Source of the DNA: Octopus sinensis
Taxonomy: Eukaryota
Length of the DNA: 64,000 bases
Direction: 5' to 3'
NCBI RefSeq assembly: GCF_006345805.1
Contig: NW_021836179.1
Span: 186,001 to 250,000 of the forward strand
Numbering within the stretch: the stretch's first letter is position 1; every line of letters begins with the position of its first letter. Positions 13,863 to 62,559 of the stretch are shown here, in pieces. A model generated the notes under the pieces. It ran no database searches, was not told the DNA's origin, and was given only the letters and a program-made list of their open reading frames with translations. The translations under genes and the position numbers were made by a program.

Positions 13863-13900
<38 letters not shown>

Positions 13901-20660: not shown

Positions 20661-20703
<43 letters not shown>

Positions 20704-28948: not shown

Positions 28949-28991
<43 letters not shown>

Positions 28992-38469: not shown

Positions 38470-39274
38470 TGTATACTCTTTTACTCTTTTACTTGTTTCA
38501 GTCATTTGACTGCGGCCATGCTGGAGCACCGCCTTTAGTCGAGCAACTCGATCCCGGGACTTATTCTTTTGTAAGCCCAGTACTCATTCTATCGGTCTCT
38601 TTTGCCAAACCGCTAAGTGACGGGGACGTAAACACACCAGCATCGGTTGTCAAGCAATGCTAGGGAGACAAACACAGACACATATATATACATATATATA
38701 CGACGGGCTTCTTTCAGTTTCCGTCTACCAAATCCACTCACAAGGCATTGGTCGGCCCGGGGCTATAGCAGAAGACACTTGCCCAAGATGCCACGCAGTG
38801 GGACTGAACCCGGAACCATGTGGTTGGTTAGCAAGCTACTTACCACACAGCCACTAAATGCAAAGGATTTTGTGGTACATATGTTTCTGGCTTTATTGAG
38901 CAATTTATATCAATGTATAATTGATATAATTGATTATGCATTGATATAAATTGCTCAATAATGCCAGAAACATATGTACCACAAAATCCTTTGCATCCTG
39001 TTTTTTCTTTTGATAAATATATCCTATCACCTACACCACTAGCTGGCATATACAGGTGCTTACAGTTATCAAGTATTCACCCTGAATTTTTTGTACCTAT
39101 ATAGGCGCAGGAGTGGCTGTGTGGTAAGTAGCTTGCTAACCAACCACATAGTTCCAGGTTCAGTCCCACTGCGTGGCATCTTGGGCTGGTGTCTTCTGCT
39201 ATAGCCCCGGGCCGACCAATGCCTTGTGAGTGGATTTGGTAGACGGAAACTGAAAGAAGCCCGTCATATATATG

Positions 39275-39346
<72 letters not shown>

Positions 39347-39555
39347 TGTGTTTGTGTGTCTGTGTTTGTCCCCCTAGCATTGCTTGACAACCGATGCTGG
39401 TGTCTTTACGTCCCCGTCACTTAGTGGTTCGGCAACAGAGACCGATAGAATAAGTACTGGGATTACAAAGAATAGGTCCCGGGGTCGATTTGCTTGACTA
39501 AAGGCGGTGCCCCAGCATGGCCGCAGTCAAATGACTGAAACAAGTAAAAGAGTAT
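38470..39555. mobile_element. Inverted pair of (TA)n-core SINEs (38470-38855 -, 39100-39555 +)
   Basis: Full consensus in opposite orientations. Confidence 0.88.
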
Positions 39556-39911
39556 ACTTAAATGCATAGCTAAGTTTCAGCTAGAACCACCCTGGGACAT
39601 GGTTAATGTAGAGACCCCATTTGGAAACAAGAATCAATGATGTTTCACATTACAGTTGTTCTGGGGGCACCATAACCCATTTGAGTAAAGGGTTATTGTC
39701 TGCAGTGATAGATCTGGGTGTATAGGGTGGAACTGAAATTTGTTGGAGATATTCACCCAGGAACCATTTCGATATCATAATTTGTTTCTTCTTCTTCTCC
39801 TATGTGTCTTGGCATGATGTTAAAGAGAGGACGGTTGGCATAAGGACCAAGCTGATGCTGTTGGTGGTGACCCAGCAGGGTCATGAAGTTGATGGCGAAA
39901 AACTTAAAACA

Positions 39912-45400: not shown

Positions 45401-45944
45401 TGGAGTGGATTTGTCATCATTGTTGTTCTTCTTCCTCTTCAACCACTTCTTTCTTTCTATGTGCAAGATATTACGAAGGGGTTACACAAGTAGAGAGAAA
45501 GGCTCCTCCAGATTTCAAATCTCTTCAAGTCATTCTATATCTTATGTCATCTGGTTGACCACTTTTGATTTTAAATACAGCCAGAGAGGTCAGATCTTCT
45601 GATGCTGTTTTTCAACTTATTTTCCATCAATGTAGACCCAGAGTTTATTTACATGCCTCCTCTTCATCCATTTCCTCCATCCTTCATCGTTCTTCTCTTT
45701 GTTTATATTATCAAGTCTGCAACAACTGTTGTAGTTGACCCTTCCACTTTTTTCAGCCGTTTAAGGCTCTGGTCTCAAAGACACTCATCTGGTCACTGCC
45801 ACTGTGCTTCTGTTGTTGTTGTTGTTGTCAACACCAGCTCATTGGCCATTCCCAGCATCAGCTCTGCCACTATAAATCCGTATGGAGTCAGGATCCTTTG
45901 GTTTGTGAATCTGTGGTGTATATATATATATATATACACACACA

Positions 45945-47925
45945 CAGGAGTGGCTGTGTGGTAAGAAGCTTACTTCCCAACCACATAGTTCCGGGTTCAG
46001 TTCCACTGCGTGATACTTTGAGCAAGTGTTTACTATTATAGCCTCAGGCCAACCAAAGACTTGTGAGAGGATTTGGTAGACGGAAATGAAAGAAGCCCGA
46101 TATCATCATCATCATCATCATCGTTTAACGTCCGCTTTCCATGCTGTCATGGGTTGGACAATTTGAGTGAGGACTGGCGAACCAGATGGTTGCACCAGGT
46201 TCCAATCTCATCTGGCAGAGTTTCTATAGCTGGATGCCCTTCCTAATGCCAACCATTCCGAGAGTGTACTGGCTGCTTTTACGTTACACCGGCACAAGGG
46301 CCAGCCAGGCGAAACTGGCAACGGCCAGGCTCAAATGGTGCCTTTTATGTGCCACCTGCACAGGAGCCAGTCCAGCAGCACTGGCAACGACCTCGCTCGA
46401 ATCATTTTTTGCGCCACCAGCACAAGTGCCAATGAGGCAATGCTGGTAATGATCACACTCAAATGGTGCTTTTCATGTGCCACCAGCAAGGGAGCCAGAC
46501 AGCTGCTTTGGCAATGATCACACTCGGATGGTGCTGTTAGCGCTTCACTGGCACGGGTGCCAGTCATCGAATTTGGTTCAATTTTGATATATATATATTT
46601 ATATATTTAAGGCGGCGAGCTGGCAGAGTGGTTAGCACGCCGGGCGAAATGCGTAGCCGTATTTCGTCTGTCGTTATGTTCCGAGTTCAAATTCCACCGA
46701 GGTCGACTTTGCCTTCATTCTTTCGGGGTCGATGAATTAAGTACCAGTTACGCACTGAGGTCGATATAATCGACATAATCTCTTTGTCTGTCCTTGTTTG
46801 TCCCCTCTATGTTTAGCCCCTTGTGGGTAGTAAAGAAATATATATTTATATTATATATAAATGTGTGTATATGTTTGTGTTTATGTTTGTCCCCCAGCTT
46901 CGCTTGACAACCGATTTTGATGTGTTTGCGTCCCTGTATCTTAGCGATTGGCAAAAGAGACTGATAGAATAAGTATTGGGCATACCAAAGAATAAGAACT
47001 GGGGTCCATTTATATTTAACTACAGGCGGTGCTCCAGCATGGCTGCAGTCAATTGACTGAAACAAATAAAGGAATACAATATATACATTATATATATATA
47101 TATATATATACATATGCATACATAACATATATATATATTATGAGAGACACATAAAGGGGAATGGTAATGTGGGAGGTGACAAGAATTAGAAGCAGTGGGG
47201 CAAGGGCAGAAGAGTGGCTGTGTGGTAAGAAGCATGCTCGCCAACCACATGTCTCTGGGTTCAGTCCCATTGCATGGCACATTGGGAAAATCAAAACCTT
47301 GTGAGTGGATCTGTTAGACGGAAACTGAAAGAAGCCTGTCATATATATTTATGTGTCTCTGTTTGTCCCACCAACAGAGCTTGACAACCAATATTGGTTT
47401 GATTACATCCCCGTAACTTAGCAATTTGGCTAAAGAGACCAATAGAATAAGTATTGGTCTTAGAAAGAATAAGTCCTGAGGTTGATTTGTTTGACTAAAG
47501 GCAGTGCTCCAGCATGGCCACACTCAAATGACTGAAGCAAGTACAAGAATAAAAGAATATATATATATATATATATATACACGTGGCCTTACTTGTGCCC
47601 GGGCTAGTAGGGTGCTAAGAGCATCATCCAAGCGTGATCGTTGCCAGAGTGGTTGACTGGCTTCCGTGCCAGTGGCACGTAAAAGACACCATTCGAGCGA
47701 GGTCGTTGCCAGTACCGCCTGACTGGCCCTCCTGCCGGTGGCACGTAAAATGCACCCACTACACTCTCGGAGTGGATGACGTTAGGAAGGGCATCCAGCT
47801 GTAGAAACTCTGCCAGATCAACATTGGAGCCTGGTGCAGCCATCTGGTTTGCTAGCCATCAGTCAAAATCGTCCAACCCATGCTAGCATGGAAGGCAGAC
47901 GTTAAACGATGATGATGATGATGAT
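45945..47925. mobile_element. Pile of SINEs from three families
   Basis: (TA)n-core pieces, RTE-tailed SINEs with internal arrays (46100-46590, 47590-47925), and a Nin SINE at 46610-46842. Confidence 0.82.
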
Positions 47926-50900
47926 GATACATAATACATATATATATTATATATATACATATATATATATATACACATACACACATAATATATATATATG
48001 TTTATGTAAAAGAAGGGAAATGAAATGTTGAAGTTGATATTTAAAAGGAGACAGTGAATGAGAGAGAGAGATGAAAGTAAAAGGGGACATATGAAGGATA
48101 TAAAATAGGAAAAGTATGGTTGTTGTTGTTATTGTTTATTATGATGATGATGATGATGTAGGTGGTGAGCTGGCAGAACAGTTAGCATGCTGGGCAAAAT
48201 GCTTGGCAGCATTTTGGTTGTCTTTACGTTCTGAGTTCAAATATTGCCGATGTCAACTTCCATTCTTTCAGGGTCGATAAAATAAGTACCTTTCGAGTTC
48301 TGGGGTCGCTGTAATCAACTTACCTGCTCCCCTGAAACTGCTGACCTTGTGCTAAAATCTGAAGCCATTCTTATTATTATTAATATTATTATTACTCGTT
48401 TGCCGCTACAGTCTGAGTTCAAATTCCACCAAAGTCGACTTTGCCTTTCTTCCTCTCGGGGTCAATTCAATAAGTACCAGTTACACACTGGAGTTGTGCA
48501 ACTGGTACTTATTCCACCAAATTCCACAAGGTTGACTTTACCTCTCATCCTTTTCTGATTGATAAAATAAGAACCAGATAGGGGCTGGGTCTGATGTAAT
48601 CAACTAGTCCCCTCACCCGAAATTTCAGGCCTTCTTCCTATAGTAACAAAGGATTATTATTATTATTATTATTACTGTGACGAGCTGGCAGAATTATGTG
48701 GATGCAAAGCAGAATTTTGACCATCTTTACATTCTGAGTTCAAATTCCACCAAGGTTGACTTCGCCTTTCATCCTTTAGGGATTGATGAATTAAGTTCTA
48801 GCTGAGTACTGGGGCCCCCCTTCCTTGAAATTGCTGGCCTTGTGCCAAAATTCAAAATCACTTTTATTATAATAGAAATATCGTAAAAAATAGGGATTTT
48901 CATAGAAGGCTAACAAACCTGCCATACACAGACAACTTCAGCTTTAATATAGAGAGATAATTAGGGTTCAGCTAACAGCTTCACCACATCCCGAAATTAG
49001 AAATGGGAGTTAAAAATTCCTTTTCTACTACTATAAGAATCTCCATGACGGTAAACATACTTTTTACGAAGGCAAAGAGAAAGACAATGAATCAACATGA
49101 CCAGAATTAATTATATTCGTGTTTCGAGATTAAAGTAATTTGAATTTTACTTACTTCTCTCTTCAGTATAATATTTCCAATTTTTATACAGTTTCAAAGT
49201 GCTATGACTGAATATGTACACAATCGAGCCTAATTATAATTAAATGGATAATTTTACCTATAAAGGTAATTTTAACGTACCGATTGACTTAGTAAAATTG
49301 TTAATTAATTAATTAATTAAATAATTAATTAAATTACTGTGCTAGTTGGGTGCAAAGAGCACCATACGAGTGTGATCGCTGACAGAGCGGCTAACCGGCT
49401 TCTTTGCCAGTGGCACATAAAAGACACCATTCAAGTGTGATCGTTACCAGCGTTGGCTTACTGGCACTCGAGCCCCGTGCTAGTAGGGTGTTAAGGGCAC
49501 CATCCGAGCATGATCGTTGCCAGAGCGGCTATCTGGCCTCCATGCCGATGGCACGTAAAACACACCATTCGAGTGTGATCGTTACAGCATTGCCTTACTG
49601 GCACCTATACCAGTGGCATGTGTAAAAGATTCGAGCGAGGTCATTGCCAGTACTGCCTGACTGTCCCCATGCCAGTGGCACGTAAAAGCACCCACTACAG
49701 TTAGGTGCTGGGGTTGATGTAATCGACTAGACCCCACACCCAAAATTTCAGGCCTTGTGCCTATAGTAGAAAGGATTATTATTATTATTATTATCTTCAA
49801 ATTATCACCAAAAAAAGATGGGGGCATGGCTGTAAGGTTAAGGAATTCACTTTGCAATCTTGTGGTTTCAGGTTCAGTCCCACTTTGCAGCACCTTAAAG
49901 AATTAATTTCTTCTAATGTTCCAGGTTGACTTAAGCCTTGTGAGTGGGTTTCGTACCTGGAACTGATAAAGCCTATGGTATATACATGTGGGTGTATATT
50001 CATGTATGCATATCTACATTTGTACTTATATGTGTATGCATTTATGTGTGTGTGTGTGTGCGTGCGTATGTCTGCTCATTCTCCTTGTTTTGACATCTGC
50101 TGCTAATTATAAACAAATGTCACGTCAAACAAACAGAGTCGTTTGTTTGCAGTGTTCCACCAGAAAACATATCCAACCATTGTGCTGTTCATGTTGGAAG
50201 AACTTGGGGAAATATTCTCTTGCTTGAAGCCAGCTGAAGATTGGTGACTCTCATCAAGTGTAGTCATAGACTTGACTGAGTGGAACTCACAAGAACCTGG
50301 CAAGAAACAAAACAAAATTATTAGAAGGAAAATACAGAAAAGAAAATACACCACCTGATGTATTATAAAGGTTTTGACATCCATTTTCCCTAACTGGCAT
50401 GGGTAGGACAGTTGACGAGGAAGCAGTGAACCAGAGGACATTGCTGAGCTCCAATGAAGATTTGGCAAGATTTCTACAGCTGGATGATCTTCTTAACACC
50501 AGATACACACATACACGTGTGTGTGTGTGTTATGCATGCATAAGAGTATATGAATGAATAAACATGGGTTTACTTATGTTTGATTGCACATCTGACTTTG
50601 TATGCTAGCATGGGTTAGATGAATATATTATTGTAGCCTTGTTTTACAGACAGACAGCCTTCCTATTGCTCACCCAAAACCATCTTGCAAGAACAAAAGT
50701 TCTTATTTCCCATGTCTTCCAAGGTGGGGGTGATTGGTTGACAGATGTTTCTGCTTGGAGCAACTTAAAAGAGATTGCAAACATAAACAAATGCACAGAC
50801 ACCTATGCGCACACACACTCAGCTCAAGTTCACTGCTTCCTGTAGCAGAAACAGCTGGAAGCTAATGAAGGTGTCTACGTAACTCTTGTTCTTTTGTCAT

Positions 50901-51539
50901 TCATTGATTCATAGCTAAAACATACATGGACACAAATATTTATACATGGGTATGTGAAGGTATATTCATATAGTTTCACACGTGCATTTATGTATATGTG
51001 TATGTATGTATATATCATCATCATGATCATTTAATGTCCTCTTTCCATGCTAGCATGGGTTGGGCTGATTGACTGAAGGCTGGTGAACCAGATGGTTGCA
51101 CCAGGCTTCAATCTTGATCTGGCAGAGTTTCTACAGCTGGATGCTTTTCCTAACGCCAACCACTCTGAGAGTGTAGTGGGTGCTTTTACGTGTCACCGGC
51201 ACGGGGCCAGTCACGCGATACTGGTAATGACCTTGCTCAAATCTTTTACACGTGCCAGTAACGCAATGCTGGTAACTATCAAGCTCGAATCGCGACTTTT
51301 ATGTGCCACTGGCACGGAAGCCGGTTAGCCACTCTGTCAACGATCACACTCGTATGGTGCTCTTTGCTCCTCGCTAGCACAGATGCCAGTCATCGGATTT
51401 GATTTTGATTTCACTTGCATCAACATGTCTTCGCAAGCAGAGTTTTAGTGTCCAAAGAAGGAAAAGGTATGCTAAATAAGTGGCTGGTTACACCCCTTGC
51501 ATAGACCACGAGGTTATGTTCTCATGTGGCTTGCCGAGT

Positions 51540-52400
51540 CTTCTCATGAACGGCATATTTCCAAAGTGTCTGTCACTATTTTTCCCTTGGTGAGGCCTAA
51601 AGTTCGAAGGTCATGCTTCACCACTTCATCCCAGGTTTTCTGGGTCTACCTGTTCCACAGGTTCCCTCAACCTCTAGGGTGTGGCACTTTTTCACACAGC
51701 TATCCTCATCCATTCTTGCAACATGACCATAACCAGTGCAGTCGTCTTTTGCACACCCCATCTGCTGCTTCTTAGGTCCCAACTTTTCTCTCAAGGTACT
51801 TACACTCTGTGTCGAGTATGCACACTGACATTACACATCCATCGGTGCATACTGGTTTCATTCCTTGCGAGCTTACGCATGTCTTCAGCAGTCACAGCCC
51901 ATGTTTCACTGCCATGTAGCATGGCTGTTCGTACACATGTGACATACTGTCTACCTTTTACTCTGAGTGAGAGGCCCTTTGTCACAAGCAGAGGTAAGAG
52001 CTCTCTGAACTTTGCCCAAGCTACTCTTATTCTAGCAGCTACACTTTCAGCGCACCCTCCCCTGCTACTGACTTGGTCACCTAGGTAATGGAAGCCATCA
52101 ACTACTTCTAGTTTTTCTCCCTGGAATGTGGCGGAAGTTGATCTCTGCACATTTTCAGTATTTATAGCTCCCGAGCATCTGTCACACACAAAAACTATCT
52201 TCCCAGTTAGCCTTCCTTTGATATTGCTGCACCTCTTATGTGCCATAGCTTACACTGGGTACATCTTAGATTTTCTTCTTCTACCTAAACCTCTACTACA
52301 GATCGCAGGGTCATCTACCTGAGGGATTTGTGGTTTGTTGCCTTCCCACTTTTAGGATTTTGGTGTTTTAGCTAGGTTGACTCTAAGGCCCTTTGATAAT
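51540..52400 (-). mobile_element. RTE LINE fragment with PHD-like insert
   Basis: KGLRVNLAKT..HKRCSNIKG..FVCDRC..LEVVDGFHYLGDQVSSRGGCAESVAARIRVAWAKFRELLPLL..LHGSETWAVT; same family as 14270-14830. Confidence 0.87.
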
Positions 52401-53937
52401 ATATATATATATATATATTATATTTAGCAGAAGTAACAAAGTGACCAAAATTCGAAAGTTTCGTTAATTAGCATTTATCAAACTGGTTCTTTGAAGGTAT
52501 ATTCCCAGACCTCCAAACACCACTTTGATGAGTGTCAAATTTCTTGGATCTTGAGTCCCTACTGTCACGCCCCTATCACCCCTACCTCTATCTTTCATCT
52601 CTCAATCACTCTCTCTTCTTCTTTTTACTCTACTATCTTACTGCTGTGACAAAGATTGGCAGTAAATCTCTTCTCTTCACCATTCTTCCAATGCAACTAG
52701 GGATGTTACTGGACCCACCTGAGTCTCTCCCCAAAACTCAGCCACTCCTTTTCATATTATACATATATATGTATGTGATCCTGAAGAAGGTCTCTTTTAT
52801 TTTTCATTCCTCCTGGGGTCAATAGAGTAACAGTCTATTGATCCCAGGAGCGGTGGAGGATCATTCTGATGATGATGGTCACCAGAATGTCATTAAACAC
52901 CCCCACCAATATTTCCTAATCCACCTCATTGAACCCCCAATACTTCATAATAAACTACACCAGTTATAACTCCTCACCTAATACAACACAAAACACACTT
53001 CACCTGCCAAACCCCTTTTTCATACAAACACATCTTTCTCATTGCTACCCAAACATCGTCTCTGAATTAAATATAATTAAGAAGAACCTACCTTTCATTA
53101 ATGGGCTTATTCATTAACCAATCTTTATGATCTCAATCAGCGACAAATAATAACGATCCTCTCAACATGCTGTCTATCAGTGTATTATATGAAAGCCCAC
53201 CTTTGGATAAGCTTTCCGAGTTAATCAATGTTGTGTATGATAATTGTGTGGATTATATTGAAATGTCGAGAGATTTACAGCATTTGTCAGGTTAAGAACA
53301 GTTTCATCTCCAGCTTTATTGGTATCTGTAAATCCAGGTAAATATGATGGAAACCAAGCCAACCATGACTGTCCATCATTTTCAGTACATATAATCATTA
53401 GTAATACTTATATTCCATCTAACTAGCAAAATGTTCAGTCTGTCTTGTATCTGACAAATGTCTATGAAACATAATAAAGTCTATGTTTTGCTAATTGTTC
53501 CATGTTAACGAAGTTTGAACATGATTGCTGTGTGTTGGGACATAATATAGCATGTATACCAATTAAAGTTAATTTTCTCTACGCTTAGAGTCTCGTTATT
53601 GAGTGCTTTTGGAACAGGGAATCTCTTTGACTAATTATCGTTAAATAAATCTAAGCCACACATGACTATTTCTTTGTGATGTTGAGAGCAAATATCATTT
53701 CCAGTGAAAATAATTATTTCTAATATTTCGACTCCATGTAATTAATGAAACTTATTAATACATCTTAGAATAGATTGTAATAAGTTGTTTAAATATTAAT
53801 TAGACAGATTAATTCCCTGACAGAAATACATAAATGTTTTGTTTGTGTTTTTCAAATGATGAAGCAAACATCATCTCCCTGAAACTTAATATTTTCACAA
53901 AGCTAAATGTTTTCCTTATATTCTTTACAGATTCACT

Positions 53938-56900
53938 ATGGAAGACCAGACTGAAAATACTTTAAGGAAACTTATGCCTCAGAAATGGGCTTTGAGTTAC
54001 TCAACACCAAAATGGGATGAAGAAGGAGTTGACAATAAAAGGGGTAAATACGAGGAAGATGATGGTTCAAGGAGAAGTGATGAAGGATATTGTAGTGTTA
54101 GTTCAGAGAGAGAATCAGCAGTGAAGGCCATATCTGTGGCAAGACTCAACACACATGGAGACAAAGAAAGCACAAAAGAAACTGAAAAACAAATAGTTGT
54201 TAAAATACAGAGGATTCGTCTTCAATATGATTGCAGCATGATGTTTATGGAGCATATAATTAAGGAGAGCAAACATTATGAAAGTCTGGGGTTAAGTGCC
54301 AATTGTATTTTAGAAAAGGTCAAAGAGAGACTTGGAATTTTGCTGAAATATACTAAAGAACAGAATATTTCTATTGAGCAGGACCTCGAATGGTTTCAAC
54401 AAAGACTCTTTGACATTTATGTCACCTGTAACCCATACAACCACAAGACCATTGAACCAGCAAAAGTAACCACAAAATTTCGGCCGCTTCAGCCAGTTGT
54501 GACCAGAGAAGCAAATATTGAGGAATCTGGAGAAGAATTTGAAGAAATCCCAATAATATCCAATATTGTCATCATAGAGGAGGGAGTGATGACATATTCC
54601 CACCTTTGTAAGACAATAAGTTTAGTAACAAGAGACAGTGACAGAATTGATGTCCATTGTCCATCTTCTGTGACCAGTTTCACCAGAATCAGTGAAGACA
54701 TGGTTCTGGCAACCCTCCCATTCCAAAAATGATTCTTATTATCAGCCCCAAAACCTTCAAGATCAAAAGGATACAGTTGGGGTTACATATGGTGAGTTAC
54801 TTGGAAGATTCTACACTTATAGGTGTAGAAATGTTTGGTAAGATAGTTTACCAATTTGATTGGGAGGATAATACCATAAACTATCAATTTATTACCAAAG
54901 AAACCCCTACAGATATTGCTGTAGGGGTCCAGAATATACTTGTAATTACATTCGCCAGCATCAACAGAGTAATCTGTTACAAACTGGATGGCCAACAGTT
55001 ATGGGAGGTAGAGACCCATTCTCTGCACCTCCCAAGTAAAATCTCTCTCTACCAAAATTATTTCTATGTCCTCCAGGGACAAATAATTTATAGGATTTCA
55101 GCTAAAGGTGTGTAACAAGGAGGGACATTGGCAGGAAATGCCGCTCTATTTCTGTTGGTAAAGATACCATTTTGGTTACAGATTATTGCAGCAAACCACA
55201 TGGTATTCAAATGAGTAAAGACTTTTGGCCCAAACTGTCATACAACCACCAGCTACATACCCCCAGTTTAAAAGACTATATTGATATTGAGAATTGCTAC
55301 AACATTACAAATATTCTACCTATGTCTACATCTTCTATATTAATAATTTACAAAAACAAGAAAGCTAAATTATTCACTGATAACGGGGAAATAATTAACC
55401 AAAATAATTCAGTTTTCCTTGAGCTTCCTTCTTTCTGTTGTAGAATAAACGCAAACAGATTCCTGGTATTTTATCGTGAAAAGAAAGGATTTCAGTATAT
55501 CACCTGTCCTGAACTAAGAAAAGGCCCTTTAATAAAGGTGCAAACTGATTACATGAAAATATGTCATATTGTATCAAATAAGTGTCTGGCTGTGACCACA
55601 ACTGAAAACAAAAGCGAGGTCCATATCCTCTTGATCAACGAAGATAAAGTTGACATTGCAGAAAGAATTTCTCTGGGACATCATAATGTCAGCATTGCTG
55701 CAACTCCAATTAATTTTGTAGTCGTAGATGGAAACGAAAATAAAATGGTATTTTATTCCACATGTGGTGAAGAACTTTTTCAAAAATACCTTCCATTCTA
55801 TGGCTACCCTCATCACATCTACTCTGATAATGTTTATTTCTATGTCCTCTTCAGGAGACACTCTATTCTCATATGTTACGATCTACATGGACAAATAAAA
55901 TGGCAGTGGGAACTGCCTTTCCCTGTTCACCCTCACATTGCTGTTTTCCAAGGAACTCTTTATGTCCCAGACACTCAACTCAACAGGGTTCTTCTTTACA
56001 AGTATCAAGACCGGTCATCTGCCTGCCTTTTACCCATTAAAAATCCTTATATCAGAAATCTAAATCTACGTCTCAAAGAAAAGGAGAATGACCAAAAACT
56101 TGTCATTGGCGAAATATGTAATCTGGCCAATGGACAGTTGGTGGTATCTGACATCAACCATGATTGCTTGTTGTACATTTCTGAGGAAGGAGACATTGTG
56201 TCCAGATTATCTCTGCCGTCTACAGCCACAGATATATGTCGATGGGATTCTAATCATATAGGGGTCACATTACCCCTACAGAAACAATTAAGGGTCATTG
56301 GAAACCTATCAAAGAGAGTGAGAAGTGTATCATTAAGGCAGCCTTATGTACGGATGTGTAAGATGGGTGAAGGTGAAATTATTTGTTATTGTGATAAACC
56401 ATCACATTTAGACATTTTAGCCATCAATTATTATAATCAAGTCGAAGTAATTAAGACAATTAATATCCCTGTGTTTGTGAAATCATTATCAATAGACAAG
56501 AAAACAGAAAAGCTATTAATTGTTACTAGGGAAAAAGCTTTTCAGTACAACACTAGAATAGGTGGTGGTGGTCATGGCGGTGATGGTAGTATTAGTAGTA
56601 GTGATGGTATGGTTTCCAGTGATTCAGAGACCAAAACAGAAGCTTTCTTCAAGGACATTAGTGGTGGTGGTCATGGCGGTCATCAGATGGTCCCCAGTGT
56701 TTTAATGTCCCAAGTGAAACGTCCCCTCAGTCTCCAAGGTGGATCTATTGACCAAACGTCTGTTTATCTGATAGACAGAAGCTGTATGTTTGCAATAAAC
56801 GATCAGAACTTGTTGGTTACTGATCTCGTTACTAATAATCAACTTAATTATTATATCGACCTGGTGGATGTATTTTCCAGAAACATTTCTCTCAGTGAAA

Positions 56901-59488
56901 TGTTGTCTTCCATTTTATATCTACAGGACCTGACAGTTTCTGATAAAGCCAGACGTATTCCTCTCCCTAAACATTTGGGAGACGAAGAACCAACGGATAT
57001 TAATCGTTTGGTTCTTACTGAAAATAATCTGATTGCAGGATGTGACTGGGAGAATGGAAACATTAAGATATTCACATTGGATGGTCACCTTATGGATTCA
57101 ATCAAAGTGAATGTTAATTTTGATATTAAAATGTGTCGATGGCAGTCAAACACACTGGTCATTACGAGTTGGGATTATTTTGATGATAATACACACCAAC
57201 TGTTGACATTAAAAGTGGAGTTTCCATTGTCGTTGGTAATTTACAAAACGAGAAATAATTATAATTGTGTGGCTTCTTTATCAAACAATCAACTGGTTTT
57301 GAGTGAATGGAGAGATGAAAGACATTTGCATTTTGTTGATATTGATGAAATACATTCGAATGTGAAGGAAATAAAAAAAATAGACATACCTGAACCATTA
57401 ATAAGAAGAGACAAAGATGGAGATTATTCTGGTAGAATCCTGGATATTAAAGTTACTGATGAAGATGTCATCATTGTCTTAAACAGGAGATTCATCATTT
57501 TCTTCAACAGAGGTGGTCAATATTTACATTCAGTCAGACACTACATGAAGTGTTTTGATGTTGACAGGATGACAATTGATGACAGTTTTTTGTACATTTA
57601 TGGTCGGTGGGAGAAATGTTTTTATTCATTTGGATATCAAAGCATTTTGTGTTTGACCCAGAAAGGGGAATACGAGAGAATATTTTTAAATGAAAGAATT
57701 TATAAAGATGAATTAGATTTCACCAGTATAAACTGTAAAGGACCAAGGTTTGTTGGAAGCTCCGAAAGGAGAGAGAGTGAATTGTATGTTGAAGGGTTGT
57801 TTATGGTGAATCGAGACAGCTTCCCGGTTGCTCGTTTACAAACAGACGAATGTCCTGTTCAAGTGAAAGATTTTGATGTCTCTGAGGAAGGAAAGACAGT
57901 TGTGTGTGAAAAAGCCAATAATGGAAATGTTAAAATATTCGATGAAGACGGCCAGTTGCTATGTCACAGAAATGTTGCAAGTTTAGTTGGTGGTGTGTGT
58001 TTTACACAAGAATCACACATAATGGCCACGGTTCCTAAAAGGAAAGAAATATTTCATCTGAATGGAGAAGATTTGCAGACATCTCAAGTTTGGTCGAGTC
58101 TCATCCCTTATGGTGTAATATGGAGAAAAGTGGTGGGTATTTACTGGTGTGTACATAATGAATTGATTGAATGTCATTGCATAAAGATTGATGGGGACCA
58201 AGTGAACATTCTGGAATCTGTGTCGTCATTAAATCTTGATTCTGGTCTTCGTTTCCCTTCCATTACATCTGAAACGAACAAGGAAATATTCAGTAATGAA
58301 TTAATTAATAAATTGGAATACAGAGGAGGAGATGGAGATGGAGGAGGAAGAAGAAGAGGTAAATCAGGTGAAATAATTGGTAAAGGTAGATTAAAGGTGA
58401 GATGTGGTAATTACATAGCGGAGATTAATAATTCAGGAATTGATGAAATATCAGTGAGGAGACTTCCATATAGGACAGCAATGGTCCCTTTTTCCATTCC
58501 TGCATTCGAGGAACCTGTTGATTATGATTTGTGGGACATTAGGGACCGGAACAGTAAACTAATTAAGTTAGATGAGAATGTGAGTGTGTTGATGTTTCGA
58601 GAAAGTGTCACATTAATCAGAACAACAACAACAACAACAGTGGACATACTTCAACATGAACAACAACAACGACCACCACTGGACATATGTCGGTGGACAG
58701 AGGAACGTTTCATTGTCGCCTTTGGGAGAGAAATGAGGGTCTTCAACAGGGATCTCCATCGTTTAAAAACCATCAGTACTGAGAAATACTACAACAGGAT
58801 TTATAAATACAACGACAATCAACTCGTGTGTGGTGGTCATTATATTAGAGACATAACTCAAGAAGAGAGACACGAGAAATACAAAAGAATGTGGGAGAAC
58901 AACAATTTTTACTATTATTGCGATGACCCCGACATCTTTGACCCTTATTATGTGGATGTGGTTGATATCAAAGATGGGAAATATAAAGATGAAGTGTGTC
59001 GTGGGAAGATGGGGAGATGTGGAAGGTTGGAGGGAGATGAAGGGGTGTGGGGTGTGGGAGTCACATCTTTTGGTGATGTTTTTGTTGTGAGGAGGGAGAT
59101 GAAGAAGGAGGGGGATGGAATTTGGGAAGATTTTTGTTTTGTGGAATGGTTCAGGGAAAAGTCTTTGGTGAGGAGGATAAGAATAGATGAACCGTTTTAT
59201 GATCTGGAATATTGTATTCCAAGACCTCGTCTGACCATAATTGGTGAATGTGTTTATATAACAGATTTAGAGAACAATATTTACGAAATACCTCGACATA
59301 TTGAAGAGGAAACATCTGAAGATGATGAAATCCTGGAATTAAAAGATAATCCAAAATATTTACTCCTCAGAAAGGAGGATAATGAAGTCTCTGAAGTTCT
59401 TGGTTTGGATGTTTCAGACAATTCTTTGATGGTTTTTGGAATTATTCCTGGACGTCAATCTTTTGCTTTCTTTTATTTTGACAAATAA
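53938..59488 (+). CDS. Large intronless multi-beta-propeller (NHL/TolB-like) protein, ~1850 aa if two 1-nt frameshifts (~54729, ~55111) are corrected; otherwise a pseudogene
   Basis: Acceptor TTCTTTACAG| 7 nt before the ATG. The three ORFs (53938-54732, 54729-55115, 55172-59488) join into continuous blade motifs. Six recurring modules. Confidence 0.75.
55112..59488 (+). CDS. Main open segment of the multi-propeller gene (1438 aa from 55172; frame open from ~55106)
   Basis: 4.3-kb ORF with repeated blades, e.g. GQLVVSDINHDCLLYISEEGDIV, NLIAGCDWENGNIKIFTLDGHLM, KTVVCEKANNGNVKIFDEDGQLL. Confidence 0.88.
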   Translation, partial: VTRRDIGRKCRSISVGKDTILVTDYCSKPHGIQMSKDFWPKLSYNHQLHTPSLKDYIDIENCYNITNILPMSTSSILIIYKNKKAKLFTDNGEIINQNNSVFLELPSFCCRINANRFLVFYREKKGFQYITCPELRKGPLIKVQTDYMKICHIVSNKCLAVTTTENKSEVHILLINEDKVDIAERISLGHHNVSIAATPINFVVVDGNENKMVFYSTCGEELFQKYLPFYGYPHHIYSDNVYFYVLFRRHSILICYDLHGQIKWQWELPFPVHPHIAVFQGTLYVPDTQLNRVLLYKYQDRSSACLLPIKNPYIRNLNLRLKEKENDQKLVIGEICNLANGQLVVSDINHDCLLYISEEGDIVSRLSLPSTATDICRWDSNHIGVTLPLQKQLRVIGNLSKRVRSVSLRQPYVRMCKMGEGEIICYCDKPSHLDILAINYYNQVEVIKTINIPVFVKSLSIDKKTEKLLIVTREKAFQYNTRIGGGGHGGDGSISSSDGMVSSDSETKTEAFFKDISGGGHGGHQMVPSVLMSQVKRPLSLQGGSIDQTSVYLIDRSCMFAINDQNLLVTDLVTNNQLNYYIDLVDVFSRNISLSEMLSSILYLQDLTVSDKARRIPLPKHLGDEEPTDINRLVLTENNLIAGCDWENGNIKIFTLDGHLMDSIKVNVNFDIKMCRWQSNTLVITSWDYFDDNTHQLLTLKVEFPLSLVIYKTRNNYNCVASLSNNQLVLSEWRDERHLHFVDIDEIHSNVKEIKKIDIPEPLIRRDKDGDYSGRILDIKVTDEDVIIVLNRRFIIFFNRGGQYLHSVRHYMKCFDVDRMTIDDSFLYIYGRWEKCFYSFGYQSILCLTQKGEYERIFLNERIYKDELDFTSINCKGPRFVGSSERRESELYVEGLFMVNRDSFPVARLQTDECPVQVKDFDVSEEGKTVVCEKANNGNVKIFDEDGQLLCHRNVASLVGGVCFTQESHIMATVPKRKEIFHLNGEDLQTSQVWSSLIPYGVIWRKVVGIYWCVHNELIECHCIKIDGDQVNILESVSSLNLDSGLRFPSITSETNKEIFSNELINKLEYRGGDGDGGGRRRGKSGEIIGKGRLKVRCGNYIAEINNSGIDEISVRRLPYRTAMVPFSIPAFEEPVDYDLWDIRDRNSKLIKLDENVSVLMFRESVTLIRTTTTTTVDILQHEQQQRPPLDICRWTEERFIVAFGREMRVFNRDLHRLKTISTEKYYNRIYKYNDNQLVCGGHYIRDITQEERHEKYKRMWENNNFYYYCDDPDIFDPYYVDVVDIKDGKYKDEVCRGKMGRCGRLEGDEGVWGVGVTSFGDVFVVRREMKKEGDGIWEDFCFVEWFREKSLVRRIRIDEPFYDLEYCIPRPRLTIIGECVYITDLENNIYEIPRHIEEETSEDDEILELKDNPKYLLLRKEDNEVSEVLGLDVSDNSLMVFGIIPGRQSFAFFYFDK

Positions 59489-59756
59489 ATATTTCCAGAA
59501 ATATTAAACTTCAATCTTCTTCTTCTTCTTATTATTATTGTTGTTGTTGTTGTTGTAAATGGCTTCGCACGGGAATCGAACCTGCATCGCATACATTGCA
59601 TTCTACACACTAACACTTATTGTTGTAACATTCCTCAACACTCTCTCTTTGTGTGTGTGTGTATATCTATATACAGTATATATACATGTGTTTATATATA
59701 TATACACACATATTTAGGAATGTATGTATAGAAGTAAGGCTATAAGTATGTATGTT

Positions 59757-59803
<47 letters not shown>

Positions 59804-59879
59804 GCATGCATGTATGTATAGGAATGTCTGGTCCGAAAGCAGAGACTTTCATAATCATTGATTCTCCATTAAAAGGCAG

Positions 59880-60030
59880 ACGACCACCACCGCCGTCGTG
59901 GTCGTGGCCGTCTCCGCCGTCGTGGTCGTCGTGGTGGTCGTCGTCGTCGTCGTCGTCGTCATCATCATCATCGTCATCATCATCATCGTCGCCATCATCG
60001 TCATCATCATCATCATCATCGTCGTCATCA
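59880..60030. repeat. (TCG)n/(TCA)n trinucleotide microsatellite
   Basis: Direct reading of the sequence. Confidence 0.95.
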
Positions 60031-60964
60031 GCGTTGTGTGTGCGTGTGTGCAGTCTGCATCTGACAGTTTTTAACGTTTAATAAGAATAGATTGTTGTTG
60101 TTGTTGTTGTTGCAGTGACATTCCAACTGCACACACACACAAACATTGCCTTTCGTCCTCGTAGGGTTGTTGTTGTTGTTGTTGCTGTTGGGGGTTCATA
60201 AAAAAAGAGAAGGACACTTTAAGAAGCATTCAGTAAAAGCTTTCCCATAACTGGTCATTTTTCATGCTAGAAATAGAAACCACTTTACTTTTCATATAAA
60301 ATTTGAAGGACAGCTAAGAAGCATTCATTTCATGCTAGAAAGAGCCACCTAAACCTTCACATTTTTGTTTCATCACAAATAAAAATTGAAAGACAATTTT
60401 CAAAGCATCCATGTCAAATATTGTCCTATAGATGGCCTAACATCATGCTAGAAATAACAGCCAAATACTCTGAAATTTGTATCGTTTTTCATCAAAAAAG
60501 TGAAGGACACTTTAAGAAGCAACTCTAAAGATATTGTCCTGTGGCGGTTTAAGTGTAAAATATTATAAAAGTATGCATCTATGAGTTTTATGTGTTTAAA
60601 AAACATAGCAAAGACATGTGTGTATATGTAGGTATATATAAATATACATGTGTATAAATGTTCCTTGATGATGTATATGCTTCTTCCCTAATAACTTGCA
60701 GAGAAATGGATATTTTTCATGGAATTTCCTACAAATATGCTTCAGATGGTGTAGATTCCGATTCTATGGGGATTTATTGGAAAAACCTTTTTCATTCAGG
60801 GACAAACGGTTTTCCCAACTTGTAACTGGAGATGAAAAACAGATGTGTATGAAAACGCAATGCAAAAATGTTACTGGAGCTGGAATAAAGTCCCCCAAAC
60901 AACAACCAAGGACGAATATCCATGCAAAATAAAAAGAAAAAAAGTTATGCTTTGTGTTTGGTAG

Positions 60965-61400
60965 GATCATCATCATCATCGTCATCATTATCATCGTTTA
61001 ACGTCCGTTTTCCATGCTAGCATGGGTTGAACGGTTCAACTGGGGTCTGGGAAGCCAGGAGGCTGCGCCAGGCTCCAGTCTGATCTGGCAGTGTTTCTAC
61101 GGCTGGATGCCCTTCCTAACGCCAGCCACTCCGAGAGTGTAGTGGGTGCTTTTTATGTGCCACCTGCAAAGGTGCCAGACAAGGCTGGCAAACGGCCACG
61201 ATCGGATGGTGCTTTTTACGTGCCACCAGCACGGGGGGGGGGGCAGACGGGGCTGGCAACGGCCACGATCGGATGGTGCTTTTTACGTACCACCAGCACG
61301 GGGGGGGGGGGGGGTTGGCAGACGGGGCTGGCAACGGCCACGATGGTTCTCTTACGTGTCACCAGTACTGGTATCTCAGCTACAATTTCCATTAATGTTG
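60965..61400 (-). mobile_element. RTE-tailed SINE with a poly-G-containing internal array
   Basis: (ATC)n tail and about four GGTGCTTTTTACGTGCCACC units. Confidence 0.85.
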
Positions 61401-61445
61401 AGAGATTTCGATTTCGACTTTCACTTTTATTTGATTTGATCATAA

Positions 61446-61900
61446 ACGATTTGATTTATTATGAGCTTCTCCCACAAAACCAGACAATTAATTCTGAAGT
61501 GTATTGCTATCAGCTGGCTAACTTGCAAATAATAAAAAAAAAAATCAAAGAATTGAGGCTGAAGATTGGACAACAGGAAAGAGTGGTAGAGTTGCAACAA
61601 AACAATGCCTGACCTCATGTCTTTGGCCACCGGAACAAAGCTACATGAACTTGTCCGGGATCTCTTAACCCCTCAACCATATTCTTCTGATATTGCACCA
61701 TCCGACTACCACTTGTTCTTGTCTCTACAGAACTCATCACAAGGGAAAACATTTAACCATTTGAATGGAATCAAAATGCATCTAAATGATATTTTGTCTT
61801 TGAAATTATTCAAATTTTATACTGATGGAATATTTAAATTGCCTAATAGATGGGAAAGGGTCGTTAATAATTAAGGGAAATTACTTCGCTGAATATAATA
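61446..61900 (+). mobile_element. mariner transposase C-terminal relic
   Basis: YYELLPQNQTINSEVYCYQL..NNA*PH..PYSSDIAPSDYHLFLSLQN..FYTDGIFKLPNRWERVVNN. Confidence 0.88.
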
Positions 61901-61924: not shown

Positions 61925-62315
61925 CCATTGCTCTTTATTCTTTTACTTGTTTCAGTCATTTGACTGCGGCCATGCTGGAGCACCGCCTTTAGTCGAGCAA
62001 ATCGATCCCGGGACTTATTCTTTGTAAGCCCAGTACTTATTCTATCAGTCACTTTTTGCTGAACCACTAAGTGACAGGGACGTAAACACACCAGCATCGG
62101 TTGTCAAGCAATGCTAGGGGTACAAACACACGCATATATATATATATATATACGACAGGCTTCTTTCAGTTTCCGTCTACCAAATCCACTCACAAGGCTT
62201 TGGTCGGCCTGAGGCTATAGTAGAAGACACTTGCCCAAGGTGCCACGCAGTGTGACTGAACCCGGAACCATGTGGTTGGTTAGCAAGCTAGTTACCACAC
62301 AGCCACTCCTGCGCC
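61925..62315 (-). mobile_element. (TA)n-core SINE
   Basis: Full consensus in reverse complement. Confidence 0.88.
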
Positions 62316-62559
62316 ATTGTTGCATATTAAAAAAACCCTCAGAACATTCCAGACAATATAATTCTTTTATTCGTCACTAAATTGATAGACATTCAGAGAA
62401 GGGCATTGAGCAAGGCTTCAATAAATAGGAGGGAACAGGTGAGAACCTAAACCTGGTCAACTCCTACCTGCATACCAAATACATCAAAGTACTCATTGTT
62501 AAGTCTCACCAGCCATTCATCTCCTAGCTTTTGCAGCAGCTACCATATAAGGGAGTGAG

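What the first reader, a model, noticed from the sequence alone, without database searches (positions are those of the whole stretch)
53938..59488. Giant intronless protein made of six tandem divergent beta-propellers inside a ZNF cluster
After an acidic and helical N-terminus (~200 aa), a module of ~230-300 aa recurs six times. It is marked by SFTRISEDMVLAT (~54675), FCCRINANRFLVF (~55433), DICRWDSNHIGVT (~56231), KMCRWQSNTLVIT (~57128), GVCFTQESHIMAT (~57992) and DICRWTEERFIVA (~58682). Molluscan TRIM-like/NHL families usually carry one propeller after a B-box and coiled coil. Six in series with no introns in 5.5 kb is unusual and suggests a multivalent recognition scaffold (immune or RNA-binding; inference), possibly of retroposed origin. 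Upstream exons may exist because an acceptor precedes the ATG.
Basis: partly seen in the sequence, partly recalled or inferred. Interest (0 to 1): 0.7.

Follow-up and report, generated by a model that had tools for sequence, protein, structure and literature searches.

The report
Octopus six-propeller protein gene, frameshifted copy
This is one frameshifted copy of a large, uncharacterised, octopus-only gene family whose ~1,800-residue proteins string together six NHL-type beta-propellers, two of which are evolving fast on their likely binding face, as recognition molecules do.

Summary
The modules, the six marker motifs and the surrounding zinc-finger cluster are all real. The 5.5-kb "ORF" is not continuous: two 1-nt deletions (54726/54727 and 55109/55110) split it into three frames. 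This copy is therefore either a very recent pseudogene or a mis-assembled gene.

It belongs to a family of about 60 annotated "uncharacterized" proteins of 1,650-1,900 aa. I found them only in Octopus vulgaris, O. sinensis, O. bimaculoides and Argonauta hians. About 30 lie on one 29-Mb O. vulgaris chromosome, and the coding sequence is a single exon.

AlphaFold gives confident six-bladed propellers for modules 1, 2 and 4, and a 6-7-bladed one for module 6. Modules 3 and 5 are beta-rich but low-confidence; profile comparison ties them to the others. The nearest outside relatives are the NHL propellers of RING-B-box-NHL (TRIM-NHL) proteins. This family has no RING or B-box.

Among close paralogs, modules 4 and 6 have omega 1.75-4.1 (all ten pairs p<=0.03). 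Their variable residues concentrate in the D-A and B-C (top-face) loops. Modules 2, 3 and 5 have omega 0.36-0.65 and very low dS, which suggests gene conversion.

My best reading is an intracellular, multivalent recognition scaffold in an arms race. That function is inferred, not shown. I rate it a new variant of a known kind.

The parts
53914..53930 (+). Polypyrimidine tract and 3' splice acceptor (AG at 53929-53930), 7 nt before the start codon.
   Evidence: Sequence read. The P0003 gene model (L002) joins a 31-aa upstream exon to the homologous position. That exon was not found in the window.
53938..54537 (+). N-terminal region (WIN 1-200). It is acidic, with a disordered start, about 85 helical residues and then a disordered linker.
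   Evidence: pI 5.58. In the paralog P0035 model, helices span residues 75-160 at pLDDT 50-68. No Pfam or PDB match. Three very different sequence types exist among paralogs.
54538..55267 (+). Module 1 (WIN 201-445). A six-bladed propeller, interrupted in this copy by both frameshifts.
   Evidence: P0035 model residues 205-421: 23 strands, pLDDT about 80. The module-1 profile's only PDB hits are the NHL domains of Thin and Brat, E 0.06-0.09. dN/dS 0.14-0.58.
54726..54732 (+). Frameshift 1. One base is missing between 54726 and 54727 (CCAA-AAATG against CCAAGAAATG or CGAAAAATG in paralogs). This creates the TGA stop at 54730-54732.
55106..55112 (+). Frameshift 2. One base is missing between 55109 and 55110 (AAAGGT-GTG against AAAGGTGGTG).
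55268..56077 (+). Module 2 (WIN 446-715). A six-bladed propeller, basic (net +6.6) and conserved.
   Evidence: P0035 model residues 453-706: 23 strands, pLDDT about 70-80. dN/dS 0.20-0.75. Charge.
56078..56857 (+). Module 3 (WIN 716-975). Beta-rich and NHL-like, the most conserved part of the protein. It carries a Gly-rich low-complexity loop with a 99-nt in-frame insertion (about 56582-56680) flanked by a GGTGGTGGTGGTCATGGCGGT direct repeat.
   Evidence: hhalign M3~M6 94%, M3~M4 74%, and M3 against TRIM-NHL-like P0094 95.5%. AlphaFold2 confidence is low, pLDDT 30-48 with 19 strands. Insertion shown. dS among O. vulgaris copies is only 0.01-0.15.
56945..57802 (+). Module 4 (WIN 1005-1290). A six-bladed NHL-type propeller, hypervariable on one face.
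   Evidence: 24 strands, pLDDT about 75-92. Top 11 PDB profile hits are all TRIM-NHL NHL domains. Omega 1.5-4.7 among close paralogs. 139 nonsynonymous against 15 synonymous minimum changes. Variable sites: 49/88 in D-A/B-C loops, 9/45 in the other loops, 29/148 in strands.
57803..58432 (+). Module 5 (WIN 1291-1500). Conserved and beta-rich, probably a shorter or incomplete propeller.
   Evidence: hhalign M4~M5 81%, and M5 against P0087 91%. AlphaFold2 pLDDT about 30. dS 0.006-0.09 among all O. vulgaris copies and omega about 0.4-0.5. Its first blades draw weak hits to bacterial WD40 repeats.
58433..59488 (+). Module 6 (WIN 1501-1851) plus the stop codon. A large propeller of 6-7 blades, very acidic (net -19), hypervariable on one face.
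   Evidence: 29 strands, pLDDT mostly 75-94. hhalign M4~M6 93%. Omega 1.6-3.9. 118 nonsynonymous against 10 synonymous changes. Variable sites 39/106 against 7/67 by loop parity.

Best explanation
What is shown:
- The locus is one paralog of an octopod-restricted, tandemly and segmentally amplified gene family.
- The protein is about 1,800 aa, encoded on one coding exon behind a 5' intron.
- It has no signal peptide or transmembrane segment, so it is most likely soluble and intracellular.
- It consists of an acidic, partly helical N-terminus followed by six NHL-type beta-propeller modules. These descend from the propeller of molluscan RING-B-box-NHL (TRIM-NHL-like) proteins, but the RING and B-box are gone.
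- In this window the copy carries two 1-nt deletions in module 1. It is either a very young pseudogene or an assembly error; the sequence alone cannot decide.

What is inferred:
- The protein works as a multivalent recognition scaffold.
- Propellers 4 and 6 are the variable ligand-binding heads. Their top faces (D-A and B-C loops) are under diversifying selection and differ between paralogs.
- Propellers 1-3 and 5, with the N-terminal helical region, form the constant part. It is kept similar among paralogs by purifying selection and gene conversion, and probably handles assembly or hand-over to a common downstream partner.
- Exchange of blocks between paralogs adds combinatorial diversity.
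- The variable faces are acidic, so the ligands are more likely proteins than RNA. Viral or transposon proteins, or another fast-evolving partner, are candidates. The logic resembles TRIM5-type restriction factors or fungal NLRs with hypervariable WD40 repeats.
For: Family and distribution:
- 57-58 homologs at 41-90% identity, all Octopus.
- The exhaustive hmmsearch of 1.84 billion representatives added only Octopus fragments, Argonauta hians (1,913 aa) and a divergent copy conserved in all three Octopus species.
- Single coding exon in P0002, P0004, P0006, P0022 and P0063.

Structure:
- AlphaFold2 models.
- Foldseek to LRP2/LRP4, DDB1 and IFT-A multi-propeller chains, E 1e-13 to 1e-20.
- Best single-domain match is an NHL protein, TM 0.67.

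NHL kinship.

Selection:
- Pairwise NG86 and maximum-likelihood codon models give omega 1.75-4.09 for modules 4+6 in all ten close pairs (p 0.03 to 3e-7). Modules 2+3+5 give 0.36-0.65.
- Minimum changes are 257 nonsynonymous to 25 synonymous in modules 4+6, against 69 to 43 in modules 2+3+5 (Fisher p=4e-11).
- Variability is enriched in loops and in one loop parity for both modules (p about 9e-5 each). The NHL blade motif assigns that parity to D-A/B-C loops.

Mosaicism:
- dS between the same two genes ranges from 0.04 (modules 3 and 5) to 0.3-0.8 (modules 1, 4, 6 and the N-terminus).
- N-terminus and module-1 types occur in combinations that no single tree explains.
- Identity to L002 steps from 97% to 91.5% at the linker.

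No TM segment or signal peptide; module charges.

This copy was functional until recently or still is. 1,460 codons remain open after the second frameshift. Window-private changes are 12N:0S in module 4 and 8N:0S in module 6, the same pattern as in intact paralogs.
Against: - There is no functional, expression or binding data of any kind. The recognition role rests on evolutionary signatures alone.
- Modules 3 and 5 have low AlphaFold2 confidence (pLDDT 30-48). 'Six complete propellers' is therefore not proven, and the alignment was shallow (about 40 sequences from one genus).
- Omega above 1 was measured on paralogs that exchange sequence. Recombination and multi-nucleotide changes can inflate such estimates, and the ten pairs are not independent.
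- The face assignment relies on DSSP strand calls and a motif register, not on coordinates.
- Pfam's NHL model does not reach threshold on the protein, and individual PDB E-values are marginal (2e-3 at best).
- The window copy itself cannot make the full-length protein as assembled.
Confidence: 0.6

Rival explanations
1. The two frameshifts are assembly (consensus) errors, and the window holds an intact, functional family member.
For: - Both are single-base deletions in short runs or repeats: an A-run, and GGTGGTG.
- The remaining 1,460 codons are open.
- Conserved modules of this copy show omega 0.36-0.61 against intact paralogs, no higher than intact-versus-intact pairs.
- Private changes follow the family's selected pattern.
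Against: - The two lesions lie within 383 nt of each other, with none in the other 5 kb.
- At the first site the paralogs read AAGAAA or GAAAAA, so it is not a simple homopolymer length error.
- No protein identical to this copy is annotated; the best match is 92% over part of it. That fits a locus which annotators skipped.
- Large, fast-turnover families usually contain pseudogenes.
Confidence: 0.45
2. The family is a conserved-function cytoplasmic scaffold, like DDB1, IFT-A or EML multi-propeller proteins. The high dN/dS reflects relaxed constraint after duplication rather than ligand-driven diversification.
For: - Foldseek hits are scaffold proteins.
- A slowly evolving single-copy relative exists: P0063, P0101 and P0102 fall in one 90%-identity cluster across three species.
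- Many paralogs are fragments or fused gene models.
Against: - Relaxation gives omega approaching 1, not 2-4 with LRT p down to 3e-7.
- Excess replacements are confined to two modules and to one loop parity, while strands and the neighbouring modules stay constrained.
Confidence: 0.15
3. It is an RNA-binding post-transcriptional regulator that works like TRIM-NHL proteins (Brat, LIN-41/TRIM71, Mei-P26), with several NHL domains reading several RNA motifs.
For: - Nearest relatives by sequence are NHL domains of TRIM-NHL proteins. From established knowledge, several of these bind RNA on the top face.
- Module 2 is basic, net +6.6.
Against: - The fast-evolving modules 4 and 6 are acidic, net -6.6 and -19. 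That is the opposite of the electropositive RNA-binding faces known from Brat and TRIM71.
- No RING or B-box is present.
- Nothing was tested for RNA binding.
Confidence: 0.15
4. The ORF is cargo of, or derived from, a mobile element or virus, and its copy number reflects transposition or retroposition.
For: - Single-exon coding sequence, high copy number, lineage restriction, and copies on several chromosomes.
- One gene model (P0010) is fused to hAT-like DUF4371.
- A mariner transposase fragment lies 1.6 kb downstream.
Against: - No transposase, reverse transcriptase or integrase domain in the ORF.
- Paralogous loci are collinear for at least 17 kb, including the 5' intron region and 1 kb downstream, with ordinary interspersed repeats inside. 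That indicates segmental duplication.
- Purifying selection acts on modules 1-3 and 5.
- The viral structure library gives only generic propellers.
Confidence: 0.05

Closest known systems
TRIM-NHL proteins: Brat, TRIM2, TRIM3, TRIM32/Thin, TRIM71/LIN-41, Mei-P26, and molluscan RING-B-box-NHL proteins such as Acanthosepion (Sepia) pharaonis CAE1315789.1
   Same: - Six-bladed NHL-type propeller with the same blade motif. The family's 'DICRW...VTLP..KQL.VI' matches 'HGICLW...VTLPENKQICFV' in the cuttlefish protein.
- These are the only non-family sequence relatives found.
- Cytoplasmic, and the top face is the used face.
   Different: - No RING, no B-box and no demonstrable coiled coil.
- Six propellers in series instead of one.
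- The variable propellers are acidic.
- Dozens of fast-evolving paralogs, restricted to octopods.
LDL-receptor-related proteins (LRP2/megalin, LRP4, LRP5/6) with arrays of YWTD six-bladed propellers
   Same: Several six-bladed propellers strung along one chain. These are the top Foldseek PDB hits for the N-terminal 1,177 residues, E about 1e-20.
   Different: - LRPs are extracellular and membrane-anchored, and their propellers are separated by EGF and LDL-A modules.
- Here there is no signal peptide, TM segment, EGF or Ldl_recept_b Pfam match.
- The resemblance is in fold only (about 10% identity).
DDB1 / CPSF160 / SF3B3 and IFT-A WD-repeat proteins (cytoplasmic or nuclear multi-propeller scaffolds)
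   Same: Intracellular proteins built from two or three propellers that dock other proteins. They score strongly in Foldseek, E 1e-12 to 1e-19.
   Different: Those are seven-bladed WD40-like propellers in single-copy, highly conserved genes. No sequence similarity was detected.
Fast-evolving intracellular recognition proteins: TRIM5alpha/TRIM22 (variable SPRY surface) and fungal NLRs (HET-E/NWD) with hypervariable WD40 repeats
   Same: As recalled from the literature, these work by diversifying selection focused on one binding surface. Their paralog clusters also show sequence exchange and concerted evolution. The same signatures are seen here.
   Different: Different folds and domains: no SPRY, and no NACHT or NB-ARC NTPase. 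No immune function has been shown for the octopus family. This is an analogy of mechanism, not membership.
Unnamed octopod paralogs, for example O. bimaculoides LOC106878473, LOC106868082 and LOC106873774; O. sinensis LOC115226288; O. vulgaris CAI97xxxxx 'hypothetical predicted protein'; Argonauta hians GAB1597371.1
   Same: Same architecture end to end, at 41-90% protein identity and up to 97% DNA identity.
   Different: Those are annotated as intact ORFs, whereas the window copy has two frameshifts and a 99-nt linker insertion. None has a described function, and none appears in the searched literature.

Membership tests
Octopod six-propeller family (unnamed; LOC106878473-like) | Full-length collinear similarity to members of about 1,650-1,900 aa. 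| tested here: met
   85-87% identity over 1,787-1,908 aligned residues to P0002 and P0003. DNA identity 92-97%.
Octopod six-propeller family (unnamed; LOC106878473-like) | Uninterrupted single-exon coding sequence. | tested here: not met
   Two 1-nt deletions break the frame. Paralogs P0002, P0004, P0006, P0022 and P0063 are uninterrupted.
TRIM-NHL (RBCC-NHL) | N-terminal RING finger. | tested here: not met
   No Pfam RING match in the window pieces. No precomputed Pfam RING among family members.
TRIM-NHL (RBCC-NHL) | B-box zinc finger. | tested here: not met
   No Pfam zf-B_box match. The cuttlefish relative P0083 has both RING and B-box.
TRIM-NHL (RBCC-NHL) | Coiled coil between the B-box and the C-terminal domain. 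| tested here: inconclusive
   About 85 helical residues are predicted at moderate confidence in P0035. They show no profile similarity to anything.
TRIM-NHL (RBCC-NHL) | C-terminal six-bladed NHL propeller. | tested here: met
   Met at profile level. Module 4 against P0083's NHL region gives 95%. hmmsearch of the family profile hit P0083 at E=1e-8. Top PDB hits are Brat, TRIM2, Thin, TRIM3 and TRIM71. Module 4 has 24 strands, i.e. 6 blades. The Pfam NHL model itself is below threshold.
LDLR class B / YWTD propeller arrays | YWTD (Ldl_recept_b) repeats with flanking EGF modules, a signal peptide and a membrane anchor. | tested here: not met
   No Pfam match. The highest 19-residue hydropathy is 1.5, and the N-terminus is not signal-like. 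Fold similarity only.
WD40-repeat propellers | Pfam WD40 repeats and seven-bladed propellers. | tested here: not met
   No Pfam WD40 match. Only weak blade-level hits of module 5 to bacterial nSTAND-WD40 proteins, E 3e-13 to 1e-3 spread over repeated blades. The confident modules 1, 2 and 4 have 23-24 strands, i.e. six blades.
Processed retrogene | No introns at all, a poly(A) remnant, and homology ending at the transcript ends. | tested here: not met
   A splice acceptor sits 7 nt before the ATG and paralog models have upstream exons. Paralogous homology runs at least 10 kb upstream and 1 kb downstream of the coding sequence. The origin of the founder copy was not testable.

The most novel reading that the evidence does not exclude
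Octopods carry a germline-encoded, combinatorially diversified family of intracellular receptors built from arrays of NHL propellers. Two hypervariable propeller faces recognise fast-evolving targets such as viral or transposon proteins, and a constant, gene-converted chassis signals onward. This would be an innate-immunity or genome-defence system of a new architecture, sitting inside the expanded zinc-finger clusters.
Probability: 0.3. Interest if true: 0.85.

Novelty: new variant of a known kind. Interest (0 to 1): 0.62.

Why it matters
Cephalopods lack adaptive immunity, and little is known about how they diversify recognition. Their genome papers stress expansions of protocadherins, zinc fingers and GPCRs.

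Here is another large expansion, restricted to octopods: about 60 annotated genes, about 30 of them on one small chromosome. I found no description of it in the searched literature.

It has an unusual architecture of six NHL-type propellers. It also has a clean evolutionary signature: two hypervariable propellers with omega 2-4 on their top faces, set in a constant frame that appears to be homogenised by gene conversion.

That makes a concrete, testable candidate for a new intracellular recognition system. It also gives protein engineers a natural example of a multi-propeller array with swappable binding heads.

This particular window copy is only a broken or mis-assembled member, so the interest lies in the family rather than in this locus.

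Tried and rejected
- **Pfam** on the three ORF pieces gave nothing above threshold. The only trace was SGL/PF08450 at E=0.025.
- **PDB by single sequence** gave nothing.
- **Self-BLASTP** of the pieces gave only E about 0.006, so it cannot establish the repeat.
- **Profile search with the word-indexed database** found no hit outside Octopus. The exhaustive search was needed to reach Argonauta and the TRIM-NHL relatives.
- **First profile for the exhaustive search (A4)** would have built 1,694 positions, over the 1,200 limit. I checked this with a local hmmbuild and redesigned it as A5.
- **N-terminal region:** no Pfam hit, no PDB hit (best E 0.44, to a designed helical repeat), and no hhalign similarity to the modules or to P0083.
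- **Module 2 profile against PDB:** no hits.
- **Viral structure library:** generic propellers only.
- **Literature:** four searches, including the LOC and XP identifiers, found nothing on this family. The 2025 paper on cephalopod C2H2 expansions (PMC12513265) does not mention it.
- **Programmed frameshifting** rejected. There is no slippery heptamer, and the closest paralogs read straight through the same sites in one frame.
- **Transposon or retrogene origin of the recent copies** rejected, because the flanks are collinear.
- **Upstream exon** of the P0003 model was not found in the window.
- Two maximum-likelihood fits stalled at omega=1. I repeated them with multiple starts.
Full report

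The region does not hold one 5.5-kb ORF. ORF listing and three-frame translation show three open stretches in three different frames: 53938-54729 (stop at 54730-54732), 54696-55112 and 55106-59485. tblastn with an intact paralog (P0002) crosses both junctions with high identity.

DNA alignment with the two closest paralogous loci shows that the window lacks exactly one base between 54726/54727 and one between 55109/55110. I stitched the pieces into a conceptual 1,851-residue protein ('WIN', with X at each frameshift).

The surrounding zinc-finger cluster is real. Six ORFs between 6.5 and 37 kb are C2H2 arrays. The 84-bp zinc-finger periodicity reappears at 63.6 kb, so the gene lies inside the cluster.

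A good 3' splice acceptor (ttctttacag|attcactATG) sits 7 nt before the start codon.

**2. What family is it?**

Pfam and a single-sequence PDB search gave nothing. A search of 5.8 billion proteins returned 57 hits, all from Octopus vulgaris, O. sinensis or O. bimaculoides. Identity is 41-90%, typical length is 1,650-1,900 aa, and all are named 'uncharacterized' or 'hypothetical'. A profile search in the same database added one more.

An exhaustive hmmsearch of 1.84 billion cluster representatives found 48 hits. The full-length ones are:
- the Octopus paralogs;
- two Argonauta hians proteins (1,913 and 1,925 aa);
- a divergent copy, P0063/P0101/P0102, which is at least 90% identical across the three Octopus species and lies on a large chromosome.

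All shorter strong hits are Octopus fragments. About 34 clusters at 90% identity map to one 29.19-Mb O. vulgaris chromosome, OX597841.1, at roughly 9.6, 9.8, 10.3, 21.9, 22.0 and 22.7 Mb.

In P0002, P0004, P0006, P0022 and P0063 the gene range equals the coding length, so the coding sequence is a single exon. Other models (P0003, P0017, P0018, P0019) add a small exon 5-17 kb upstream. In P0003 that exon joins at the acceptor seen in the window.

The window is collinear with the P0003 locus from 43660 to 60798. Identity is 72-90% in the flanks, 97% over 53978-56581 and 91.5% over 56661-59729. The recent copies therefore arose by segmental duplication of at least 17 kb, not by retroposition.

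**3. Is it six propellers?**

Self-BLAST is nearly blind to the repeat. Profile-profile comparison of module alignments shows it:

| Module pair | hhalign probability |
|---|---|
| M3 ~ M6 | 94% |
| M4 ~ M6 | 93% |
| M4 ~ M5 | 81% |
| M3 ~ M4 | 74% |
| M1 ~ M3 | 32% |
| M1 ~ M2 | 22% |
| M2 ~ M4 | 23% |

AlphaFold2 on window residues WIN 985-1851 (pTM 0.71) gives:
- a confident 24-strand, six-bladed propeller for module 4;
- a confident 29-strand propeller for module 6;
- only pLDDT about 30 for module 5.

AlphaFold2 on the paralog P0035 (1,177 aa) gives:
- a disordered start, then helices at residues 75-160;
- confident 23-strand propellers for modules 1 and 2;
- low confidence (pLDDT 30-48, 19 strands) for module 3;
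- module 4 again confident.

Foldseek against the PDB returns multi-propeller chains. These are LRP2/megalin and LRP4 (arrays of six-bladed YWTD propellers, E about 1e-20), and DDB1, IFT-A, Aip1 and UTP proteins.

So four modules are well supported as propellers. Modules 3 and 5 are beta-rich and homologous to the others, but they are not shown to be complete propellers. They are also the most conserved parts, which leaves little covariation for the predictor to use.

**4. Which kind of propeller?**

The only non-family sequence relatives are molluscan RING-B-box-NHL proteins. The cuttlefish protein P0083 (Pfam RING, B-box, NHL) matched the family profile at E=1e-8 over its whole propeller. 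A mussel protein and several unnamed ones followed.

hhalign of modules 3, 4, 5 and 6 against these proteins gives 55-96%. A module-4 profile searched against PDB sequences returns NHL domains of TRIM-NHL proteins as its top eleven hits: Brat 2e-3, TRIM2 8e-3, then Thin, TRIM3 and TRIM71. Module 1 returns only Thin and Brat.

The best single-domain structural match in the viral library is also an NHL protein, TM 0.67.

RING and B-box are absent. The N-terminal helical region matches nothing. There is no signal peptide or hydrophobic segment.

**5. How does it evolve?**

I fetched eight paralogous coding sequences, built a codon alignment, and found two things.

*The genes are mosaics.* Between the same two genes, dS differs more than tenfold by module. 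For window against L005:

| Module | dS |
|---|---|
| M1 | 0.78 |
| M2 | 0.12 |
| M3 | 0.04 |
| M4 | 0.33 |
| M5 | 0.04 |
| M6 | 0.28 |

Modules 3 and 5 are nearly identical in all O. vulgaris copies (dS 0.006-0.15), yet they differ by 0.13-0.29 from the O. bimaculoides copy. The N-terminus comes in three types and module 1 in two, in combinations that a single tree cannot explain. This indicates gene conversion or block exchange between paralogs.

*Selection is modular.* This was measured in the clade of five close copies: the window, L001, L002, L004 and L007.
- Modules 4 and 6 have dN/dS above 1 in all ten pairs by NG86.
- Pairwise maximum-likelihood codon models give omega 1.75-4.09 for modules 4+6, with likelihood-ratio p from 0.03 to 3e-7.
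- Modules 2+3+5 give 0.36-0.65 (which supersedes).
- Tree-free minimum counts are 139 nonsynonymous to 15 synonymous (module 4) and 118 to 10 (module 6), against 69 to 43 in modules 2+3+5 (Fisher p=4e-11). The result holds with the four intact copies alone (p=2e-8).

*The variable sites cluster on one face.* Variable residues sit in discrete loops between conserved strands.
- In module 4 they occupy 58/133 loop positions against 29/148 strand positions (p=2e-5).
- They occupy 49/88 positions in odd-numbered loops against 9/45 in even-numbered loops (p=9e-5).
- Module 6 shows the same parity bias, 39/106 against 7/67 (p=9e-5).

Successive loops of a propeller alternate between its two faces. 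The NHL blade motif puts the variable loops at D-A and B-C. This places the variation on the top face, the usual ligand-binding face. That last step is an inference from motif register, not from coordinates.

**6. Status of this copy**

After the second frameshift, 1,460 codons remain open. The copy's conserved modules show omega no higher than in intact pairs. Its private substitutions are 12N:0S in module 4 and 8N:0S in module 6.

The lesions are therefore either very recent or artefacts of assembly. The sequence alone cannot decide. The copy also has a 99-nt in-frame insertion in the Gly-rich loop of module 3, flanked by a direct repeat and partly shared with L007.

**7. Mechanism**

*Shown:*
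- an octopod-restricted, amplified family;
- a soluble protein made of an acidic helical head and six NHL-type modules;
- two hypervariable modules under positive selection on one face;
- the other modules constrained and homogenised.

*Inferred:*
- The protein is a multivalent recognition scaffold.
- Modules 4 and 6 bind fast-evolving ligands.
- The constant modules and the N-terminus provide assembly or hand-over to a shared partner.
- The variable modules are acidic (net -6.6 and -19), so protein ligands are more likely than RNA. Module 2 (+6.6) could still bind nucleic acid.

The evolutionary logic resembles TRIM5-type restriction factors and fungal NLRs with hypervariable WD40 repeats. 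That is an analogy from memory, not a membership claim.

Rivals considered were: an intact gene with assembly errors; a housekeeping scaffold under relaxed constraint; a TRIM-NHL-like RNA regulator; and mobile-element cargo.

**8. Novelty**

The proteins are in public databases but unnamed. Four literature searches, including gene identifiers, found nothing about them.

The fold and its ancestry (the NHL propeller of TRIM-NHL proteins) are known. What is new is the six-in-series architecture without RING or B-box, the restriction to octopods, and the pattern of alternating constant and hypervariable modules.

I rate it a new variant of a known kind, with moderate to high interest for the family and low interest for this broken copy as such.

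Noticed in passing
window 40009-41377: A satellite of 24 copies of a 57-bp unit at 96% identity. It explains the low-GC, skewed block at 40-42 kb and the spurious ORFs on both strands there (40424-41275 on the minus strand has no Pfam match).
   Followed up: partly
window 61091-61609 (+): A 173-aa ORF with a partial mariner-type DDE transposase match (Pfam Transposase_1, E=2e-7), 1.6 kb downstream of the gene. It overlaps a G-rich 67-bp repeat at 61171-61344.
   Followed up: partly
window 56582-56680: A 99-nt in-frame insertion in the Gly-rich loop of module 3, flanked by direct repeats of GGTGGTGGTGGTCATGGCGGT. It is absent from L001, L002 and L005 and partly shared with L007. The loop appears to be a hotspot for slippage or recombination, and the window's identity to L002 steps from 97% to 91.5% exactly here.
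   Followed up: partly
window, for example 1260-1520, 9610-10000, 12980-13350, 13590-14080, 17930-18310, 19690-19880, 20510-20910, 28750-29170, 38450-38860, 39100-39560, 61930-62320: A dispersed repeat of about 200-420 bp is present at 15 or more places in the window, on both strands. It also occurs several times in the paralogous O. vulgaris locus L001, at 70-93% identity. It looks like a SINE-type element and was not classified.
   Followed up: no
L003 (O. vulgaris OX597815.1, 215.6-Mb chromosome), gene 10001-14989: A divergent family member (P0063, 1,662 aa, single exon) lies on a different, large chromosome. Its O. sinensis and O. bimaculoides counterparts fall in the same 90%-identity cluster, so it evolves slowly. 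It is a possible founder, or a conserved-function copy that contrasts with the amplified subfamily.
   Followed up: partly
proteins P0005 and P0010 (O. vulgaris gene models on OX597841.1): Some annotated family members are fused to C2H2 zinc fingers (P0005) or to a hAT-like DUF4371 domain (P0010). P0001 (2,526 aa) contains two partial copies. These are probably gene-model fusions of neighbours, which shows that annotation of this cluster is unreliable.
   Followed up: no
window 57900-58150 (first blades of module 5): The family profile draws repeated weak hits (E 3e-13 to 1e-3, 4-10 stretches each) to WD40 blades of bacterial nSTAND/AAA-WD40 proteins. I read this as generic blade resemblance rather than homology.
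   Followed up: partly
window 15713-16188 and 29764-30129: Two tandem duplications of long units: 237 bp x2 and 184 bp x2, both at 95% identity. They lie between zinc-finger exons and were not examined further.
   Followed up: no
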